Virus record (IMG/VR): IMGVR_UViG_3300024358_000009
Span: 124,001-188,000 of that record
Length of the DNA: 64,000 bases
Reading direction: 5' to 3' (one strand)
Numbering within the stretch: the first letter of the stretch is position 1; each line of letters opens with the position of its first letter. This document shows positions 8,897 to 36,700 of this stretch, piece by piece. A program made the translations under genes and the position numbers. The notes under the pieces are model-generated. The model was not told the origin of the DNA. It ran no database searches and saw only the letters and a list, made by a program, of their open reading frames with translations.

Positions 8897-9353
8897 AGTG
8901 CTCACATACTCTCTTGAATAAACTAGATGCAACTTCTTTTCCGTATTTTCCTGCAAGGATAATCTTGGTCTTATACTTTACTTCTATATCTAAAAGTGCT
9001 TTGACAATAAACTGCGGAGTTATTTTTATATACTTATACTTACTTGGCGGAATTTGTGTCGATTGTGGAAATTTGTAAATGTCTTCCATAGTAAATTCTA
9101 AAACTATAAATGGTAATTCAAATTCTTCAAGCCTTAATAACTCGTCGTGAAATCTTTGTTGCGTAATGTTGTTTGAAAACTCGCTAAGATCACCTTTGCG
9201 TTCTATGACAAATTTATTTTCAAAACCCTCTAATGAATAATCGCCGGTTTTTAGTGTAGCGATAGTCATTCCATCACAAGATGGACCTGGGTTAAACTCC
9301 CAACCAAGCTGTTCTCTAGTGTCTTTGATTACTTTATATTTTTTGCTGTTCAT
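8871..9353 (-). CDS. ERCC4/XPF-domain nuclease
   Basis: Motifs DTREQ, LKTGDYS and VIERK. Confidence 0.85.
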   Translation of the reverse strand: MNSKKYKVIKDTREQLGWEFNPGPSCDGMTIATLKTGDYSLEGFENKFVIERKGDLSEFSNNITQQRFHDELLRLEEFELPFIVLEFTMEDIYKFPQSTQIPPSKYKYIKITPQFIVKALLDIEVKYKTKIILAGKYGKEVASSLFKRVCEHYGQTKESS

Positions 9354-11890: not shown

Positions 11891-12091
11891 ATGGCTAGAG
11901 TCAGTTGGACGGAATCAATGTTGAAATTCGTAAGAGAAAATCATCATAGCATGACTGACAATCAACTTGCTCTTGCTTTATCTTCTATTATAGGCGTTCG
12001 TGTGTCAAGTCATAGCGTCAGAAACATTAGAGAAGAAAAGGGTTATACAAAATGGAAAAGGTCTTCAACCAAAGATCACCCCACATCGTAG
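11891..12091 (+). CDS. Small HTH-like protein
   Basis: Pattern W...MTDNQLALALS...SHSVRNIR. Confidence 0.5.
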   Translation: MARVSWTESMLKFVRENHHSMTDNQLALALSSIIGVRVSSHSVRNIREEKGYTKWKRSSTKDHPTS

Positions 12092-12642
12092 TAGTTGACA
12101 ACTTCTACAAAGATCCAGACTCTATAGTTCGTTTAGCAGAAGAACAGGAGTATCAGCCACAGAGCAAATACTACAAGGGCGTTAGAACGGCGGAACGCTT
12201 TTTATTTCCATATGTAAGAGAAGAGTTTCAAAGACTTCTCAATTTGGAAATTACAGATTGGTTAAACCAGCCAATGAATGGCATTTTCCAGAAGACTAGT
12301 AAGGATGACCCTCTAGTGTGGCATAGTGATAGTCAAGACTATGCAGCTGCTATTTATCTAACTAAAGATGCTCCTGTAACTATGGGAACATCATTTTGGC
12401 AAGATACAAAGTTTGGGTGTAGAAGACCGCCTAGCCATCCACTTGAGAATAAGTCCGTTCAAGAGAGTGAAATCTACACAGAGTACAATCTTTTGCATAA
12501 AGACAATTGGCAGTTAGTTGATAAAGTAGGGGCGGTTTATAATCGACTAGCTCTTTGGGATGCAAAATTAATACATTCAGCTAGTGAGTATGGTTCAATG
12601 GATCGTTTAGTACAACTTTTCTTCTTTAGCGTCAAAAGATAG
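12052..12642 (+). CDS. 2OG-Fe(II) oxygenase (DUF6445-like)
   Basis: VVDNFYKDPD start, HxD (WHSD), YNRL..W, distal His and RLVQLFFF. Confidence 0.8.
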   Translation: MEKVFNQRSPHIVVVDNFYKDPDSIVRLAEEQEYQPQSKYYKGVRTAERFLFPYVREEFQRLLNLEITDWLNQPMNGIFQKTSKDDPLVWHSDSQDYAAAIYLTKDAPVTMGTSFWQDTKFGCRRPPSHPLENKSVQESEIYTEYNLLHKDNWQLVDKVGAVYNRLALWDAKLIHSASEYGSMDRLVQLFFFSVKR

Positions 12643-12650
12643 GGCGAACT

Positions 12651-13211
12651 ATGAGAGCCTTTTGGCAATTCTGGGGAAGTTATTTTAGCAAAGAACAATG
12701 TGATGAGATTATTAACAAGGCGTTAACTATTCCGTCTATACAAGCAAGTACTTATGGGGCGGTTTCCGACCTCCGAAGTTCAAGAGTCAGGTGGATACAT
12801 AGGGGCGATTTGAGTTGGAATTGGATGTTTACGCATATAGAGAACATATTTAGAAGGGCGAATGGAGCTTTTGGGTTTGATCTTAACTATTTTCACGAAA
12901 TCCAGTTCACAGAATACGATTCAGCCTATGGTGGCCACTACGGTTGGCATGAAGACCTATTATGGGTTCCCAGAAACGATTCAGCAATTCAGCGTAAGCT
13001 CTCAATAGTCATACAGTTATCAGATCCAGCTGAATATACAGGGGGCGATCTTCAGTTTGATATGGCAGAAGAAAAGCCTGACGCTAATCATTTAAAGTTT
13101 CAAGGATCTGCTATTGTATTCCCTTCTTTTGTTAAGCATCGAGTAACACCTGTCGAAACTGGTCGTAGATACAGCCTTGTAACTTGGTACGAAGGACCGC
13201 CTTTCCGTTAA
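12651..13211 (+). CDS. 2OG-Fe(II) oxygenase, PKHD/prolyl-4-hydroxylase type
   Basis: Motifs HYGWHED, RKLSIVIQLS, YTGGDL, FPSF..HRVTPV and GRRYSLVTW. Confidence 0.9.
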   Translation: MRAFWQFWGSYFSKEQCDEIINKALTIPSIQASTYGAVSDLRSSRVRWIHRGDLSWNWMFTHIENIFRRANGAFGFDLNYFHEIQFTEYDSAYGGHYGWHEDLLWVPRNDSAIQRKLSIVIQLSDPAEYTGGDLQFDMAEEKPDANHLKFQGSAIVFPSFVKHRVTPVETGRRYSLVTWYEGPPFR

Positions 13212-13471
13212 GGGGCAACCGAGGAAGTTTAGGTAGTACATTTTGTTGTGTGGGTGGGGATTATGTTTGAACCGCCCACCCCCCCGGGGCCGGGCCGGGT
13301 CGGTAAGCTGGGCAAGATAAATACCCTAGGCAAGCCGTCGCCGTAAAGCCTTATACAATAAGCACTTAAGAAAAATAAAAAAAACAAAAAAATTTTTATC
13401 GCCATAACCCCTTACGCCATAACAACTTAAAATTATTTTAAAAATATTTTATAAAAAAAGTATTTTTGCTA

Positions 13472-13500
13472 TTGTTTTTTATTTTATTGGACGATATACT
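13472..13500 (+). promoter_or_regulatory. Host sigma70-type promoter for the ECF sigma gene
   Basis: TTGTTT-N17-TATACT preceded by A/T tracts. Confidence 0.65.
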
Positions 13501-13556
13501 AATTACATAAGCAATGCACTTCGCAATGCTAACAGTAGTGAAAAGGAATTAGAATT

Positions 13557-14045
13557 ATGACCACTTCAATCGACTATGCAAAGATTACTGAAAAGCTTGT
13601 TTCCGCACTTGGCAAGAAAATACGCAACTATGCGGACTGCCAAGACATAGCTCAAAATATCCTAGTGTATGCTTTGCAAAGTTATAACCCTGCTATGGGA
13701 TCGGCTTTTGAAACGCACTGCTTTACTGTTATGCGTGGCAAGTCCATTGATTTCCTGAGAAGTAAATCCCGCAAGGGTAATCTGGTAAGCTGGGATATCC
13801 TTGAAGCTAATGACAATAATTCAGAAAAAACACTAGCACAAGGTATAGAAATTGCCGAAAAAACCTCCAAGTATAACCTATTGGAGATTGCAGAAGAATA
13901 CTGCAACGAACAAGAATATTTTATCATCCAACGCAAGCTTGAAGGCTTCGATGGATATGAAATAGCCAATATGCTAGGGGTTAGCCCAGGATATGTTAGT
14001 CAACAATTGTCAAGAGCAATAGAGAAAATGAAGGGGGGGTTCTAG
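13557..14045 (+). CDS. ECF-like sigma-70 factor
   Basis: 162 aa with only region 2 (DCQDIAQN...SIDFLR) and a region 4 HTH (GYEIANMLGVSPGYVSQQLSRA); AAAGGAA RBS. Confidence 0.85.
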   Translation: MTTSIDYAKITEKLVSALGKKIRNYADCQDIAQNILVYALQSYNPAMGSAFETHCFTVMRGKSIDFLRSKSRKGNLVSWDILEANDNNSEKTLAQGIEIAEKTSKYNLLEIAEEYCNEQEYFIIQRKLEGFDGYEIANMLGVSPGYVSQQLSRAIEKMKGGF

Positions 14046-14100
14046 GCCGAAATCGCCGATAGGCGATCTATCCGTTAGGCGGGTACTGATGAGGCCAGGA
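14040..14100 (+). ncRNA. Hammerhead ribozyme, type II (stem II open)
   Basis: GGCC-GAAA-UCGCC(GAUA)GGCGA-UC^-UAUCCG(UUAGG)CGGGUA-CUGAUGA-GGCC: complete core plus three stems; predicted cleavage after C14068. Confidence 0.92.
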
Positions 14101-14126
14101 GTCCTTAATAGAAAAGGGAATTGACT

Positions 14127-14294
14127 ATGTTGGAAAGTACTGAGAATGTAGCAACCATGGAATGCACAACTTGCGGGTTGACCATATCGGTAGAACGGTT
14201 GACCATGCGGGTCATATCTGAGAATGAAGTGCACCCCACATGCTGTATGTGCATGAGGGAATTGGAAGAATCTGAAACCCCATTGGGGGTTTAA
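14127..14294 (+). CDS. Small Zn-finger-like protein (55 aa)
   Basis: RBS AAAGGGAA; CTTC...CMC; followed by hairpin AAACCCCC/GGGGGTTT. Confidence 0.55.
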   Translation: MLESTENVATMECTTCGLTISVERLTMRVISENEVHPTCCMCMRELEESETPLGV

Positions 14295-14522
14295 TCTAAA
14301 GGGTTTTAACCTAACCTGCCAGTCTTACCCAACCTGGCCGGACCAGCCTCGGTACGCACATAGGTAATTGTATTACTTGTACTATGCCCGCAAAAATTGG
14401 ATATCTTTATCTTATTATCCAAATATCTTTTTAAAAATATTTTATTTTTATTGTAAATAAATCTGCAAGCGTAGCGAATAAGATTATATAAGAGAGAAGG
14501 GAATAAACAAAAGGAGAATAAA

Positions 14523-14681
14523 ATGGAAATTACTTGCTTGTGCGGAATTGATAATGAGGGAAATATAAACGATGGAATTATCTGCCATATGTGCGAAGGT
14601 CAACTGGCAGGGATGATAGAAAAATGGAATATCGAACAAGCCCTAATGGAAGAATATGAAAATAATTTAGAAAAGTTCTAA
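14523..14681 (+). CDS. Small Cys-containing early protein (52 aa)
   Basis: Promoter and AAGGAG RBS; MEITCLCG...CHMC. Confidence 0.6.
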   Translation: MEITCLCGIDNEGNINDGIICHMCEGQLAGMIEKWNIEQALMEEYENNLEKF

Positions 14682-14724
14682 ATATTTTCTGGTACAGGAC
14701 GAATAAGTATAAAAGGAGATAAAG

Positions 14725-14940
14725 ATGAACGATTTTGATTTTTGTGATTCTTATGACTACTCAGCATATGTAGAAGCCTTTGAGCAAGGCGTGGATGATG
14801 TGGATTTCCCCGATGATATAGGGGAAGACATGTCCGAATATGAGGGGGATCTAACCCCAGGCGAAGGGGATTATTCGGATATCTTCGACCCAGGTGATGA
14901 GATAGTCGATGATGATGGTGATTATTCGGATTGCGAATAA
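14725..14940 (+). CDS. Extremely acidic small protein
   Basis: Own promoter and AAGGAG RBS; 71 aa dominated by D/E with no K or R. Confidence 0.7.
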   Translation: MNDFDFCDSYDYSAYVEAFEQGVDDVDFPDDIGEDMSEYEGDLTPGEGDYSDIFDPGDEIVDDDGDYSDCE

Positions 14941-15603: not shown

Positions 15604-15880
15604 CGAAATTGGATATCTTTATCTAATTATATTCTTTTAAAATTTTTTTATTTTGTTGTAAATAATTTTACCCTGCCAGCGAATAAGATTATATAAGCTT
15701 GGTGGTAATGCTTAAACCATCTATGCGAATGAGTATAGAATGAGGGGAGCCTGGACTATAATTGGATAATCTTATCTTATTATATTATTTAAAATAATTT
15801 TATTTTTTTTGTAAATAAATCATAAGCACTAGCGAATAAGTATATATAAGAGATAACGATAACAACAAAAGGAGATTAAA

Positions 15881-16868: not shown

Positions 16869-19312
16869 ATGTTTAAGTTAAGATTTCACTTGGCGAACGG
16901 TCCACATAAATATAAGTGGCAACTAAAAGATAGTGAAGGAAATGTTACCTATGTAGATCCTGAAAGTGTTAACTTCACAATGAAAAATTGTAAGTTGCAT
17001 AATAGCAAAAAGATAGCAGAAAGTATTTATTCAGGCAAAGAGAAGACCGTATGTTCTTGGATAGAATGCCAAGATATATCGATAAGGTTAAGTAGCGAAG
17101 AATTTCCTGACGAATTTTTTAATAACGAAGTAAGTTATAATCCAAGGTTGGCCCCCTTCTGGAGAAATGTAGAAGGAGAAAATATTGACGGTAAATTCTT
17201 TGAAGTGCTAGAGACAAAAGGAAGGAAGGTTTACGCATGAGTGTTGAAGAATGGTCAATCGCTGGTATGTTACTAGGTGCACTAATGATGAGCGGATCTT
17301 TACTTGTGCTAGGACTATCATGGGCAATTCAAAAGCTTGAAGAATACTGGGGGCCAATGTGATCTTTGAACAAACTATAGGTTACTTGATGTTTTTTCTT
17401 TGCGTAATGATCGCTAATTTTTTTCTTCTATTCTCAGGAGATAACTAAATGACATTAGCAGTAACGCTATTTACAGTTTATTTAGTTATTATGGCATTCA
17501 TGGGGGCAAACAAATGAAAAATAAATTTTTGTATAAAAAGTGTATTCCGTATAGCATTGCAGTTGTTTCAATAAAAGAAGATAAGCTTGTCTTAATTAAA
17601 GATAAAAATATGGAAAAAGAATTAAATGAAATAAATGAAGAATTTGAATCTGATGAAATAGAATATAATGAATTCATTAAACAAACAAACGAATGCTTAG
17701 ATCATTATTTTAGCTTGTATTATGCAAGCTAGACTTGCCAAATTAGATATCTTTATCCAAATATAATTTTAAAAATTTTGTAAATAATTTTTTATATATA
17801 GCGAATAAGAATACAGAGGGTAAACCCGCCATGGGAAACTATGGGATGGGCAGAGCCTGGACTATAATTAGATAACTTTATCCGATTATCTTTTTATAAA
17901 ATTTTTATTTTTTTTGTAAATAAATTATAACTAATCACGAATAAGATTATATAAGAGGAAACAACTAAAACGAAAGGAAAAGAAGATGGAACTTGTAAGG
18001 GAAATCAAAGATTGGGCTTTGGATAATTATGATGCTGGCGGTCATTGGATTGTTGAAACTTTTTCCGATGAGGAGATTGCCGAACAGTTCAAGACATTGA
18101 ACGAAGCTAAAAAGTATTGTGGTTTAATACAAGATAGGCACGAAGATATCTGCAACGCATAAGGAGAATGAAATGGATTTTGTACTTGAGAATGTAGGCA
18201 AGATGGTAAAATTTTGGAACTTAATGCCAGAAACCTACCAAGGTTTTGGCTATGAAGTTGAAGGAGATTGGGATTACGATGCTGAAAAATTTCAGCCAAA
18301 GTGGTTTCAGTTGTATGACGAAGAACAGGTTTTGAGGTTAGGTTATTGTCCTCCCGACCTTTTGCAATATGTCGAAAGGGCTTGCAAAGAAATTGCTGCT
18401 GACCTTGAAGCGAAAGGTTTAATAGGTGATACATTAATCGAAGAAGACGAATACACATATGAGGATTATTTAGCTGACAAGGCAGACAAAGAATATTACG
18501 AAAGGAACTAATCATGTTTAAGTTTGTAGAAAAGCTATTTGGTTTTGATAGTGGTCGAATTGAGTATCTTGAATCGAAATGTTTGGAACAATCGGAGCTA
18601 ATTAAAAACCTTGCAGAAGGATTTAAAGAACAAACATTGTTATTGCAAAAGATAAGTGAACGAAAGCAAGATATTGACTATGACAGAATTGATATAGATT
18701 ACTACGATTTGGCAAACAAGATTAATTTAAAAGCCGTAGCTAGTGGAGTAGGTCTTAAATATCTAGCAGAAGAAATTGATCTTGGCGAATTAGCCAACAA
18801 TATCAGCCTAGATGATTTAAGTAGTTATTTCAATGTGGATGAAGTAGCAGCTAACTTAGACTTAAATGAGGATGATTTTGTAGATACTATTGCAGAAAAA
18901 GTTTTGGAAAAACTTGTAAATAAATATAGGGCGAAAGCCGAATAAGTATATAGAAAGGAGATGGTCATGATTAAGTTTACTCTGACAACTAAACAATTTG
19001 AACGCAGAGGCGTTATGGCAAGAGGAAGCTCACGCTTTAAGGACGAAAGAAAAAATCCTAAAGGCGGTAGAAGTGGCGACAAAGTTAGATTTAAGAAGGG
19101 AGAATACTAAAATGGATGTTGATGTAACACTAAGTTTGGTTGAAATAAAACAAATTGTAGAATCTTTGAGATACGAAGTTAGGGTAAGCAATTACATGAG
19201 AAAACATCGTAGTGAATACGCAAACCATCTTATTGAACTATCCAATAGGTTGGAAAAAATAATGATCTATCATGCAAGGAAGGATGATAAAGTTAGATGC
19301 GAACAACCTTAG
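16869..19312 (+). CDS. Cluster of small hypothetical early genes (16869-17240, 17514-17732, 17986-18162, 18173-18511, 18514-18945 and others)
   Basis: Closely packed ORFs with RBSs downstream of CGAATA promoters. Confidence 0.65.
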
Positions 19313-19629: not shown

Positions 19630-20147
19630 GAAAAATCCGTAAGGATTTGCAAAATAGATGAACTTTTATGAAACTTGGTTTGCTACTTTCCCAAGGGGCA
19701 AAAAAAGTAGCACTTTTAATAATGTGCTGACAGTAAGCACTTTGTTTTCATTTATTGATATAAACTCTTTGGGTTCAATGACTTATGTTTATTTTTTAAA
19801 TTCTTCTTGTAAGGAATACTGGTATGTTTTCCTTACAAATATAGTGGGTAGGCTTGTCCTACCCCTTCTAAATTGACCGAAATTGGATATCTTTATCTAA
19901 TTGTAATTTTAAAAAATTTTTGTAAATAATTTTTATTAGCTGACGAATAAGTATATATAGAGAGGAGTAACTATTAAAATTTGAGTTATGAGTGGGAGTT
20001 CCTGCTTTCCAAAAGGAGAGGATGAGGGGAGCCTGGAAACTAATTAGATATGTTTATCTTATTATCTATTTAAGAATTTTTTTATTTTTATATAAATAAA
20101 TCTGTATGGCCAACGAATAAGATTATGTAAGAGGAAAGGAAAAGAAA

Positions 20148-21868: not shown

Positions 21869-21942
21869 GGGGATGTAGACCAACAGGCAGAGTCAAAGGA
21901 CTTAAAATCCTTCCAGTATGGGTTCGACTCCCATCATCCCTA
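21869..21942 (+). tRNA. tRNA-Leu (anticodon UAA), short variable loop, no encoded CCA
   Basis: Acceptor GGGGAUG/CAUCCCU; anticodon arm AAGGA-CUUAAAA-UCCUU; T arm AUGGG-UUCGACU-CCCAU; discriminator A. Confidence 0.92.
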
Positions 21943-22173: not shown

Positions 22174-22334
22174 ATCCCCAATTCCCCTTATGGAAGGCCA
22201 AGTGGGCGGGTTTTCAGCGATTCCCTCACGCTCCTGTATATACTTATTCGTTATAGAAGCGGAAATATTTTTTTAATTTTATTTAAAATATTTTTGGTTG
22301 GTGAGCGAATAAGACTATATAAAGGAGAAAGCAA

Positions 22335-28051: not shown

Positions 28052-28124
28052 GGGCGTGTAGACCAATGGCAGAGTCAAAGGACTTAAAATCCTTCAAGTA
28101 TGGGTTCGACTCCCATCACGCCTA
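28052..28124 (+). tRNA. Second tRNA-Leu (UAA), short variable loop, no encoded CCA
   Basis: Near copy of 21869-21942 with a compensatory acceptor stem GGGCGUG/CACGCCU. Confidence 0.92.
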
Positions 28125-33709: not shown

Positions 33710-36700
33710 ATGAAGATAGAAATGGATGGCGAAAAGTATCTTCTTTTTGCAAGTGAAAATGTGAAGCGTGTTTTTTTAAGCAATAAGGTAGCCATATTTG
33801 ATTTAGTAAAACTTTATAAAAATAAACCTTTTACTAAAACTGGCACATGTACAATTGTTAATGTTGGGAATACAAATGTCAGTATTTTAAATATAAAAGC
33901 TTTAGATTTTGAAACTCAGGAAAACATTAATTGTTTTGTGTTACATTGCGTAGGAAATTATAAAGAATTAACGCCAGTAGCAGCTAATAAATGGTCAGTA
34001 ACTCTTTATTGTGGACATAAAGCGATTATTGATGAAACAGTTGATTCGATTGATAAAGATCATAAAGTTCATTGTTTTTTATGTGAGAAGAAAAATTAGG
34101 AATGAGCTATGTCAGAACTAATTATTGAGGAATTAAAAAAAAGAATTCAAGAACTTGAAGAAAAGAATAAAAAGCTGCGTAAAGCATGTCAAAGAGCGTT
34201 TGACTTCGTTGATGACGAAGACAACAATAAAATAGTAGTTAAAATGCCTTTCTCATTTGGTCTGCATTGTGATTTAGCCGAAGCTTTAGATATTCGTGAC
34301 CTAAAAAATTTGAAGGATTAATATGGAAAAGGAAATGATAAATTTAATTTTTGCGATGTATCAGTTGTCTGGTGGGAATAATGGAGAATTGTTTGCGAAG
34401 CTAACAGTAGAAGAACAAACTGTTTTAAGGTCTATCGTTTTTTCAAAGTTATTTTTTAATACAGAGATAAAAAATGGCAATTAAAAGAAACTGCTTCTGC
34501 TGCAATAAAAAACTCAAAGGTTTATATACTAATATAGAAGATCCTCCGTATGACGCTGTATCTTTTTCATCAGATGGAAAATATGGAAGTTCTATATTTG
34601 ATCCATATGAAGAAAATGCACGAATAGAAATTTATATATGCGATGAATGTCTTAAAAAGAAAGCGAAGCTTTCTTATTATTATGAACTAGAACAAAAAAT
34701 AGAGATTAAAAATATTCAGTCTTTTGACAAGAAACTAAAACAGGATGAAGCTATTATTAAAGAAAGAACTAAAAAGTTAATAGCTGCCGTAAAGAAATTT
34801 AAGAGGATGAAGAAAAATGACAAGAGAAGAAGCTGAAATTTATTGCGAAGAAATTGGAGCAAACCCTTTGTATGCAAATGGTTATGACGATTGTATAATT
34901 GGAGTTGGAAGAATATTTCATGATTATAAAATAATCTATGACACTAATAAGATTTTACATAAAATGGTAGAAGAACAAGGCATGACAACTGAAGAAGCTA
35001 TAGAGTTTTACGAATATAATATGGTTGGTGCATACATGGGCGAAGGCACTCCTATATTTTTGGAAAATCATAATGAACAATGAGCAGTTAAACAAAATAA
35101 AAGAAACATGGAAACCAAAAGTAGATAAGCATTATGGAGAATGCTATTTGGCAAATGCAAGATGTGCAATACATTTTCTTTTACTAGAAATAGAAAGGCT
35201 AAAAAATGACATTGCCACAAGAAAGAACAAGGAGTGTGATACAAACTAGAGATTTTTTAATAGATTTAATTAATCCCAAAAAAACGCCAAAAGTTCCAAA
35301 ATACATAAGACTTTCAGCAAAAAGACTTTTAAGACATTTTCCTTGGGATTATCATTTAAAACAAATATCTAAAAAAAATCCTGATGTATTCGGTGACATA
35401 AATGACATATTTACTTTTTCTATTACTAATAATTTTAAGTTTTCTAACGATAAAAAGTATAAGAAAAAATCAAAAAATACTAAAAATCTTTGAAGAAGAG
35501 GCGAATAAGATTATAGATGAAAAGTGCGGTTTAGAAATATTAAAAGTTATTTGTTCAATAGAAAATAAAATACGGAAAATAAAATGACAGATGAAGAAAA
35601 AATTAAATTAGTTATAGAAACAAGAGATGTTTTTGGAGATCCAAGAAGATTGTGTTTGCTTCTTGTTGATGAGATTAAAAATCTAAGATTAGAACTGGAA
35701 AAAGCAAAAGCATATGACTACAGATCCTATGCACCGAATGTTTGGACGCAAGCAGGAGAAAAATATGTTTTCCTGCAATAAAAAAGATGGCAATGGATTT
35801 AAAATTGGTTTTAAGAATGGATATACTTTGTCAGTAAGATTTGGAGTAAGAAACTACTGCGAAAATTTAGGCAAAGAAGATAAGAAATTTTTAAAATCAA
35901 GTGATGCAGAAATAGCCATTATTGATCCAGCAGGAAAGCTAATGCAATTAAATGATCAAGATGCAATATTGGCAAATCAATCAGCAGAAGATTTAGTAGA
36001 AACGCTTTTTAAATATTTTATGATGAAAAATGAAACCTATTAATGTTTTTTTATTAGTGATTTTAGCATTGGTTGGAAGTTATTATAAACAATATATTTA
36101 TCACAAGGAAATTGGTGAAAAATTAATGAATAACCTTTATGAGATGGAACAAAGAGTTATACCAGACGAATCTATTAATGATGTTCCTGCTTATTCAGAA
36201 AAACAAATGATAAAGATAAAAGTAATTCATGAGTGCCAACAACTTATTTATGAGGAGTTTAAGTTATGGAAGTAACAGAAGAATTTATTCAAGAGATTGA
36301 AAAAGACATGCAATCCAATAATGGAAATTGGGTTTCTAATGAAAATGTTACCAAGCTTATTGCAGAAATAAGAAGATTGAAAGGGCTTATTAAGCCATGT
36401 TGTCAGAAAAAGAATTGCGTGAAATAGAAAATAGATTATACAGAGCAACTCCTGGTCCTTGGGTTTCTTCGTATTCTGAAAATGGAAAAACAAGCATATA
36501 TTCAGAAAGTAAGGAGCGAGCATATTTTTATCATGGAGAATGGATTGCAGATGTATCTACGGAAGAAGACTTAAAATTTTTAGTTAATTCTATAGAAGAT
36601 ATACAAAAGCTTTTGAAAGAAGTTTATAGGCTAAAGACTATTTTGGATAAAAACATGTATAAAGAAATTGTTGAAGCATTTTGTCATAAATTAAGTGGAA

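What the first reader, a model, noticed from the sequence alone, without database searches (positions are those of the whole stretch)
14040..14100. Hammerhead ribozyme fused to the stop codon of the early sigma gene
Seen: the complete hammerhead core (CUGAUGA 14086-14092, GAAA 14049-14052, AUC cleavage triplet) with stems I-III. Stem II begins in the sigma TAG stop codon and the cut falls 23 nt after it. Inference: self-cleavage separates the sigma mRNA from the downstream Zn-finger ORF and sets their stabilities. A terminating ribosome would cover stem II, so cleavage could be coupled to translation and act as a timer for the early cascade.
Basis: partly seen in the sequence, partly recalled or inferred. 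Interest (0 to 1): 0.82.

Follow-up and report, generated by a model that had tools for sequence, protein, structure and literature searches.

The report
Type II hammerhead ribozyme after sigma gene
A complete, evolutionarily conserved type II hammerhead self-cleaving RNA sits right after the stop codon of a phage sigma-factor gene, but this placement is the usual one for phage hammerheads, so it is a new example of a known element, not a new mechanism.

Summary
Window 14045-14096 (+) holds a full type II hammerhead: GAAA, CUGAUGA, AUC cleavage triplet, stems II, III and I of 4, 6 and 7 bp, and a cut after C14068, 23 nt past the TAG. My descriptor scan found it once in the 206-kb phage genome. 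In 1500 shuffled windows no hit had stems this long. Rfam Hammerhead_II scores it 29.7 bits, below the cut-off of 37. Six distinct copies follow homologous sigma genes (52-98% protein identity). All stem positions pair in them, and five pairs show compensatory changes. One relative's copy scores above the cut-off.

Among 59 unrelated phage type II hammerheads the median gap from the upstream stop codon is 2 nt, and the genes upstream are diverse. The ribozyme's own conserved 5' A-R doubles as the last two bases of UAR, without clear enrichment of T before it. The downstream Zn-finger ORF is not a fixed partner: that slot is hypervariable, and one relative lacks the ribozyme.

The most likely function is constitutive intercistronic cleavage leaving hairpin-capped ends. 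The translation-coupled timer is untested and unlikely. Cleavage was not shown; metatranscriptome contigs contain the uncut junction.

The parts
13557..14045 (+). Sigma-70-family (ECF-like, regions 2 and 4 only) gene, 162 aa, stop TAG 14043-14045
   Evidence: ORF list. Pfam Sigma70_r2 30.3 bits (cut-off 24) and Sigma70_r4 25.2 bits (cut-off 24.1). Homologues at 52-98% identity.
14044..14044 (+). Unpaired A two bases before GCC; also the middle base of the stop codon
   Evidence: A at this position in 57 of 68 independent phage type II hammerheads. It is position 1 of the Rfam consensus.
14045..14048 (+). Stem II, 5' strand (GGCC); G14045 is the last base of TAG
   Evidence: Pairs with 14093-14096. 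The pair 14045-14096 changes G-C to A-U in L008.
14049..14051 (+). Core G12 A13 A14
   Evidence: Sequence; Rfam alignment; invariant in six relatives.
14052..14067 (+). Stem III hairpin: A15.1-U16.1 plus UCGCC/GGCGA, loop GAUA. It would be the 3'-terminal hairpin of the sigma mRNA after cleavage.
   Evidence: Fold. Three of its pairs show compensatory changes among relatives.
14068..14069 (+). Predicted cleavage site: after C17 (C14068), before U1.1 (U14069)
   Evidence: Position follows from the hammerhead consensus. Cleavage itself was not tested.
14069..14085 (+). Stem I hairpin: UAUCCG(U)/(G)CGGGUA, loop UUAGG. It would be the 5'-terminal hairpin of the downstream RNA.
   Evidence: Fold. 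Pair 14071-14083 is U-G, U-A or C-G among relatives.
14086..14092 (+). Core C3 U4 G5 A6 U7 G8 A9 (CUGAUGA)
   Evidence: Sequence; invariant in relatives.
14093..14097 (+). Stem II, 3' strand (GGCC), followed by a conserved A
   Evidence: A at the second base after GGC in 46 of 68 phage hammerheads.
14103..14109 (+). Tail CCUUAAU, candidate pseudoknot partner of loop I (14074-14079)
   Evidence: A helix of 4-6 bp is possible at the same offset in all six relatives, but the statistics are weak. This is the contact type described for type II hammerheads in PMC3088659.
14113..14129 (+). Ribosome-binding region AAAGGGA and ATG 14127; conserved left edge of the variable gene slot
   Evidence: Conserved in L093, L094, L010, L011 and L096 although the ORFs differ. 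Homology to L093 breaks at 14129.
14127..14294 (+). 55-aa Cys-rich ORF (CxxC...CCxC), putative zinc ribbon; occupant of the variable slot
   Evidence: ORF list. Only weak Pfam hits. Homologues in L096 and L007.
14312..14370 (+). Conserved non-coding element (hairpin with loop UCUUACC); right edge of the variable slot
   Evidence: Homology to L093, L007 and L011 resumes here. The fold is not significant.
14474..14494 (+). Promoter-like 21-mer that starts the next transcription unit
   Evidence: Seven copies on the + strand of the window, none expected by chance.

Best explanation
This is a genuine type II hammerhead ribozyme in the short spacer between a phage sigma-factor gene and whichever small gene occupies the next slot.

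Inferred mechanism:
1. The bicistronic transcript folds into the three-way junction as soon as CUGAUGA-GGCC has been made.
2. It cuts itself after C14068.
3. The sigma mRNA keeps its stop codon. It ends 23 nt later in the stem III hairpin with a 2',3'-cyclic phosphate.
4. The downstream RNA begins with a 5'-hydroxyl directly in the stem I hairpin, followed by its own ribosome-binding site.
5. Both products are therefore capped by terminal hairpins and by end chemistries that bacterial exonucleases and 5'-end-dependent RNase E or RNase J handle poorly. The two cistrons become physically and kinetically independent.

What is shown: the motif, its conservation and covariation, and its generic intercistronic placement. 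What is inferred: cleavage, the nature of the ends, and their effect on stability.
For: - Complete core and three helices.
- One hit in the window and genome; 0 of 1500 shuffles give stems as long as observed.
- Six distinct sequences behind homologous sigma genes: 100% of cells paired, 5 pairs with compensatory changes, 0 of 500 shuffles as good, and slid registers only 25-41% paired.
- The L008 copy reaches 38.4 bits, above the Rfam cut-off.
- 81 viral contigs carry hammerheads of the same pattern. In 59 independent ones with an identifiable upstream ORF the median gap from the stop is 2 nt, and in 65 with an identifiable downstream ORF the median gap to the next start is 27 nt. The upstream gene families are diverse.
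- The literature proposes the same role for phage hammerheads (PMC3088659, PMC6765202). Three bacterial type II hammerheads were shown to cleave in vivo (PMC8782182).
Against: - No cleavage data. The one read-laying run failed on a filter.
- Contigs of eight metatranscriptome runs hold 31-mers from 14039-14099, nearly all of which span the cut site. Uncut RNA, or carried-over DNA, is therefore present.
- The Rfam score is below the gathering threshold.
- The tertiary contact needed for fast cleavage is only weakly supported. The window copy needs a shifted register with two G-U pairs.
- L007, a relative with 76% sigma identity, does without the ribozyme, so it is dispensable.
Confidence: 0.7

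Rival explanations
1. Translation-gated timer. Ribosomes terminating at TAG 14043-45 unfold stem II, the GAAA core and half of stem III. Cleavage would then depend on translation of sigma and would time the early cascade.
For: - The stop codon lies within 1 nt of stem II in all six sigma-linked copies.
- It abuts or overlaps stem II in 29% of other phage type II hammerheads.
- Steric occlusion by a terminating ribosome follows from known footprints of about 12-15 nt downstream of the A site (established knowledge, not tested here).
Against: - T at -3 is not clearly enriched (32% against a 25% background), while A-R at -2 and -1 belong to the ribozyme. The overlap looks opportunistic, and compaction explains it.
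- The register differs among relatives (overlap of 1 nt or gap of 0).
- Cleavage is irreversible and needs one short ribosome-free interval, so occlusion gives at most a modest delay (inference).
- No evidence that the gene is early. No sigma-70 promoter or terminator was found by the consensus scan.
Confidence: 0.1
2. Insulator at the edge of a gene-cassette slot. The ribozyme plus the conserved ribosome-binding region give whatever ORF lands in the hypervariable slot the same 5' end and translation context, as the synthetic RiboJ element does. They may also serve as the conserved left arm for recombinational gene exchange.
For: - In phages about 95% identical in DNA, homology breaks exactly at the ATG (14129) and resumes at 14312, with a different ORF in between.
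- Four relatives carry four different ORFs behind the same hammerhead and ribosome-binding region.
- Perreault et al. noted hammerheads flanking changing genes in prophages (PMC3088659).
Against: - L008 keeps the ribozyme with an empty slot, which ties it to the sigma 3' end rather than to the downstream gene.
- There is only one hammerhead in the genome, so the slot is not flanked on both sides.
- Insulation was not measured.
Confidence: 0.3
3. Inactive relic or mere hairpins. The sequence resembles a hammerhead but no longer cleaves, and it acts only as a pair of stabilising or pausing hairpins, or not at all.
For: - Rfam score below the gathering threshold.
- Weak tertiary contact in the window copy.
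- The uncut junction is present in RNA-run contigs.
- L007 lacks the element.
Against: - Every core nucleotide is invariant across sigma proteins diverged to 52% identity, while the stems covary.
- The whole short-loop subclass scores 29-35 bits for reasons of model composition.
- No U-tract terminator is present.
Confidence: 0.07

Closest known systems
Rfam RF02276 Hammerhead_II: type II hammerhead ribozymes of bacteria, phages and metagenomes (Perreault et al. 2011, PMC3088659)
   Same: Same permuted topology, with stems I and III capped and stem II open. Identical catalytic core. Conserved A-R before stem II. Short stem II. A 3' tail that can pair with loop I. Intergenic location between phage genes on the coding strand.
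   Different: Scores 29.7 bits, below the family's gathering score of 37. Loop I is short (5 nt) and stem II has 4 bp, unlike the 2-bp stem II and long pseudoknot of the consensus. Sits behind a sigma-factor gene of an uncultured 206-kb river phage.
Hammerheads flanking genes in prophages, and HHphage of haloviruses HF1/HF2 upstream of an early helicase gene (PMC3088659)
   Same: Phage-encoded, inside a polycistronic unit, and proposed to cut long transcripts into gene-length mRNAs.
   Different: A single copy in this genome rather than several flanking a block. No mapped transcript end here, whereas the HF1/HF2 5' end was mapped within 3 nt of the cleavage site.
Type II hammerheads of Desulfovibrio vulgaris, shown active in vivo by cyPhyRNA-seq (PMC8782182)
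   Same: Same ribozyme type; one locus shown lies among phage-derived genes.
   Different: Those have direct evidence for the cyclic-phosphate and 5'-OH ends. This one has none.
RiboJ-type synthetic ribozyme insulators (recalled from my own knowledge, not checked here)
   Same: A hammerhead upstream of a ribosome-binding site that gives the downstream cistron a fixed 5' end with a hairpin.
   Different: RiboJ is an engineered element of a different hammerhead topology. Insulation by the natural element is only inferred.

Membership tests
Hammerhead ribozyme, type II (RF02276) | Catalytic core C3 U4 G5 A6 N7 G8 A9 and G12 A13 A14 | tested here: met
   CUGAUGA at 14086-92 and GAA at 14049-51. 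Aligned to the model core without mismatch. Invariant in six relatives.
Hammerhead ribozyme, type II (RF02276) | A15.1-U16.1 pair, H17 at the cleavage site, and G10.1-C11.1 closing stem II | tested here: met
   A14052-U14067, C14068, and G14093-C14048.
Hammerhead ribozyme, type II (RF02276) | Three helices in type II order: stems III and I are hairpins, stem II is open | tested here: met
   The minimum-free-energy fold gives exactly this. The descriptor scan reports stems of 4, 6 and 7 bp.
Hammerhead ribozyme, type II (RF02276) | Helices supported by covariation in homologues | tested here: met
   18 pairs, 100% of cells paired, 5 pairs with a change on both sides, 0 of 500 shuffles as good.
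Hammerhead ribozyme, type II (RF02276) | Score at or above Rfam's gathering threshold (37 bits) | tested here: not met
   29.7 bits. The homologous copy in L008 scores 38.4. Other short-loop copies score 29-35.5 bits.
Hammerhead ribozyme, type II (RF02276) | Tertiary contact between loop I and the 3' tail after stem II (pseudoknot) | tested here: inconclusive
   4-6 bp possible at tail offset 7-8 in all six copies. Shuffled tails do as well in 3-45% of trials.
Hammerhead ribozyme, type II (RF02276) | Site-specific Mg2+-dependent self-cleavage giving 2',3'-cyclic phosphate and 5'-OH ends | not testable with these tools
   The read-laying run failed. RNA-run contigs contain the uncut junction, which neither proves nor excludes cleavage.
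Sigma-70 family (the upstream gene) | Regions 2 and 4 recognised by the Pfam models above their cut-offs | tested here: met
   PF04542 30.3 bits against a cut-off of 24; PF04545 25.2 bits against 24.1.

The most novel reading that the evidence does not exclude
Phage type II hammerheads may be built so that the upstream gene's UAR stop codon supplies the ribozyme's own conserved 5' A-R. A ribosome sitting on the stop would then hold the ribozyme unfolded, and self-cleavage would report that translation of the upstream gene has ceased. In this phage that would tie the lifetime of the sigma/downstream transcript to sigma translation. A second, milder version is that the ribozyme is a natural insulator marking a slot where genes are swapped.
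Probability: 0.1. Interest if true: 0.7.

Novelty: new member of a known kind. Interest (0 to 1): 0.3.

Why it matters
The biological role of bacterial and phage hammerheads is still open, according to the 2019 review PMC6765202.

This locus offers a clean natural comparison. The same sigma gene occurs with the ribozyme followed by a Zn-finger ORF. It also occurs with the ribozyme followed by other ORFs, with the ribozyme and nothing after it, and with the Zn-finger ORF directly coupled and no ribozyme.

The survey made here is a simple, testable regularity. Across phage contigs, type II hammerheads start a median of 2 nt after a stop codon and end about 27 nt before the next start. I did not find this stated in the papers I read.

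It also shows that Rfam's threshold misses a whole short-loop subclass of phage type II hammerheads.

Tried and rejected
- **Read mapping.** Read ends at the cut site therefore could not be examined.
- **Contig ends as a substitute.** Look-ups of the exact sigma and Zn-finger proteins returned only contigs that span the site.
- **Cultured relatives.** There is no near DNA match among phage records. The terminase is only 21-25% identical to Bacillus and Clostridium phage terminases. The sigma has one weak hit. The host stays unknown.
- **Genome scan with the sigma alignment.** It found only cellular sigma factors at 24-34% identity. The more distant sigma relatives checked in viral and metagenome contigs (23-28%) carry no hammerhead.
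- **Apparent read-through protein P0002 (182 aa).** It seemed to continue through the ribozyme, but the DNA of L093 and L094 has the TAG. I read it as a gene call with a TAG-recoding table and rejected it as evidence of read-through.
- **Longer stem II.** The extension UUCU 14040-43 with AGGA 14097-100, plus GGGGG with UCCUU, is not conserved in relatives, so I did not count it as part of the ribozyme.
- **Consensus promoter and terminator scan of 13150-14750.** It gave nothing on the + strand.
- **Fold of the right-border element 14290-14420.** Not better than shuffles.
- **Other ribozyme families.** None found in the window at Rfam thresholds.

Full report
**1. What is there**

The window is bases 124001-188000 of a 206-kb virus record assembled from river metagenomes.

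The sequence at 14040-14100 reads, on the + strand, as follows:
- UAG, the stop of ORF 13557-14045
- GCC
- GAAA
- UCGCC-GAUA-GGCGA (stem III and its loop)
- U-C, with the cut after this C
- UAUCCG-UUAGG-CGGGUA (stem I and its loop)
- CUGAUGA
- GGCC-A

This is the complete hammerhead core in the type II permutation. Stem III (14052-14067) and stem I (14069-14085) are hairpins. Stem II is open and is formed by GGCC 14045-48 with GGCC 14093-96.

ViennaRNA returns exactly this three-way junction as the minimum-free-energy fold (-24.5 kcal/mol, z = -2.2).

**2. Is it more than chance?**

- Rfam's Hammerhead_II model aligns end to end at 29.7 bits, below its gathering score of 37. E is 0.00023 for the 251-nt search, 0.058 for the whole window and 4.5e-5 for the one-family search of the genome.
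- A descriptor I wrote asks for the core, a non-G at position 17, and stems of at least 4, 3 and 4 bp. It finds this site and nothing else in the window or the whole genome.
- It finds 26 hits in 1500 dinucleotide shuffles of the window, or 0.017 per window. None of these has stems as long as the real ones.

**3. Conservation**

The upstream ORF is a sigma-70-family protein with regions 2 and 4. Its homologues in public assemblies are 98, 76, 59, 56, 53 and 52% identical.

Five of these six homologues carry a hammerhead immediately after the stop codon. With the window that gives six distinct ribozyme sequences. On their alignment:
- All 103 pair cells of the 18 pairs are standard pairs.
- Five pairs have changes on both sides: three in stem III, one in stem I and one in stem II.
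- The stem II change involves the third base of the stop codon. UAG with G-C becomes UAA with A-U in L008.
- No shuffle of 500 matches this, and slid registers pair only 25-41%.
- Every core base is invariant.

The L008 copy scores 38.4 bits, above the Rfam cut-off. The others score 29-32 bits. Unrelated phage hammerheads with the same short loop I score 30.5-35.5 bits, with one at 40, while those with the long pseudoknot score 45-56. The sub-threshold score therefore reflects the model, not a defect of this copy.

**4. The wider family**

A pattern fixing only the core and its immediate neighbours matched 81 viral contigs, which gave about 70 distinct sequences.

In 59 independent ones with an upstream ORF of at least 50 codons:
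- The gap from the stop codon to the first paired base of stem II has a median of 2 nt.
- 17 abut or overlap the stop, and 35 lie within 3 nt.

In the 65 with an identifiable downstream ORF, the gap from the ribozyme to the next start codon has a median of 27 nt, which is room for the tail and a ribosome-binding site.

The upstream proteins are diverse and mostly unknown. Only this one is a sigma factor.

The two bases before GCC are A in 84% and a purine in 88% of copies, and A follows the closing pair on the 3' side in 68%. T at -3 is only 32%. The ribozyme's own 5' A-R can therefore serve as the last two bases of a UAR stop codon when a T happens to precede it. Seventeen of the 22 T-containing cases are real stops.

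So the 'fusion' to the stop codon is real. It is also generic, and it is most simply explained by compaction of phage intergenic regions.

**5. The surroundings**

The gene after the ribozyme is not constant.
- The window and L096 (53% sigma identity) have the Cys-rich 50-55-aa ORF.
- L093, L094, L010 and L011 each have a different ORF behind the same ribozyme and ribosome-binding region.
- L008 has no ORF there.
- L007 has sigma and the Cys-rich ORF joined as TAATTATG with no ribozyme.

Against L093, which is about 95% identical in DNA, homology stops at the ATG (14129) and resumes at 14312. The ribozyme plus the ribosome-binding region is thus the conserved left edge of a gene-exchange slot.

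The ribozyme is present on both sides of L007 in the sigma similarity series. Its absence there is most simply a loss, which is an inference.

A 21-nt promoter-like motif occurs seven times on the + strand downstream (14474, 15679, 15832, 17937, 20113, 22305, 35501; none expected by chance). It does not occur upstream of sigma. This suggests that sigma plus the slot gene form their own unit, driven by a different promoter class. Whether that unit is 'early' was not tested, and the consensus scan found no sigma-70 promoter or terminator on the + strand.

**6. How it most likely works**

After transcription of 14093-96 the junction can fold and cut after C14068. Because the topology is type II, two things follow:
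- The upstream product ends in the stem III hairpin, one base from its 3' end, with a cyclic phosphate. It keeps its stop codon and 23 nt of 3' UTR, enough for normal termination.
- The downstream product starts with a 5'-OH directly in the stem I hairpin.

From established knowledge of bacterial mRNA decay, both ends should slow degradation. 3' exonucleases need a single-stranded 3' end. RNase E and RNase J prefer 5'-monophosphate single-stranded ends. The two cistrons would then be free to have different lifetimes.

This is the hypothesis already in the literature (PMC3088659; PMC6765202). It is inferred here, not shown.

A loop I-tail pseudoknot of 4-6 bp is possible in all six copies at the same offset, but it is statistically weak. 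The window copy needs a one-base shift with two G-U pairs.

**7. The timer idea**

A ribosome on the stop codon would cover roughly 14043-14057, so the active fold and termination are mutually exclusive. That much follows from known ribosome footprints. Several points count against a regulatory role:
- Cleavage needs only one free interval and is irreversible.
- The overlap register varies among relatives.
- T at -3 is not clearly enriched.
- One relative lacks the ribozyme altogether.

I put this reading at about 0.1.

**8. RNA evidence**

Eight river metatranscriptome runs hold the locus. They also hold the sampled 31-mers of 14039-14099, nearly all of which span the cut site. Uncut RNA or contaminating DNA is therefore present. 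This says nothing about the cleaved fraction.

**9. Verdict**

The site is a real, selected type II hammerhead, and so a new member of a known family. It sits in the family's usual place, directly after a stop codon. It is not a new regulatory principle on present evidence.

Points of modest interest:
- the natural series of with-ribozyme and without-ribozyme arrangements at one locus
- the variable slot it borders
- the regular stop-ribozyme-start spacing across phages
- the short-loop subclass that Rfam's threshold misses

Noticed in passing
window 14474-14494, 15679-15699, 15832-15852, 17937-17957, 20113-20133, 22305-22325, 35501-35521 (+): A 21-nt motif, GCGAATAAGATTATATAAGAG, occurs seven times with at most 3 mismatches, all on the + strand, with none expected by chance. 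It looks like a phage-specific promoter and is also present in L008 upstream of the next gene. It is absent upstream of the sigma gene, so it may be the target of a phage sigma factor.
   Followed up: partly
window 14130-14311; L093:839-1059; L094:727-967; L010:824-930; L011:617-790: The gene slot just after the ribozyme is hypervariable. Phages about 95% identical in flanking DNA carry unrelated small ORFs there. The break points are exact, at the start codon and at a conserved element beginning near 14312.
   Followed up: partly
window 14033-14039; L112:~880-900: A run of seven G lies just before the sigma stop codon. One JGI contig (L112) has eight G, which shifts the frame and gives a 168-aa product (P0001) ending inside the ribozyme. 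This could be a sequencing error or slippage.
   Followed up: no
L093:269-817 and L094:166-714: The public gene call P0002 (182 aa) reads through the TAG as Q and runs across the hammerhead. The DNA has TAG, so the call probably used a TAG-recoding table. I did not check whether this phage recodes TAG.
   Followed up: partly
window 21869-21942 and 28052-28124 (+): Two tRNA genes, both called tRNA-Leu with anticodon UAA, are only 73-74 nt long. They lack the long variable arm usual for bacterial tRNA-Leu.
   Followed up: no
L033:324-400 (-): A pistol ribozyme (57 bits, above the Rfam cut-off) lies about 300 nt from a type II hammerhead in an unrelated viral contig. This is a ribozyme cluster of the kind described in the literature.
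   Followed up: no
tails of L013, L020, L028, L031, L034, L037, L049, L051, L072, L081: In 10 of 68 phage type II hammerheads the tail right after stem II contains AUCAG, usually as (C)AUCAG. It is complementary to the core CUGAUG and could form an alternative hairpin that sequesters the core, either as an off-state or to release the product. The window copy does not have it.
   Followed up: no
L039:1664-1733 and 2472-2542; L049:8596-8657 and 8903-8963; L050 and L067 (2-3 copies each): Several viral contigs carry two or three type II hammerheads a few hundred bases apart, flanking single small genes. The window's genome has only one.
   Followed up: no
window 12052-12642 and 12651-13211 (+): Two adjacent genes upstream of sigma encode a DUF6445 protein and a 2OG-Fe(II) oxygenase. 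The pair is conserved in L007.
   Followed up: no
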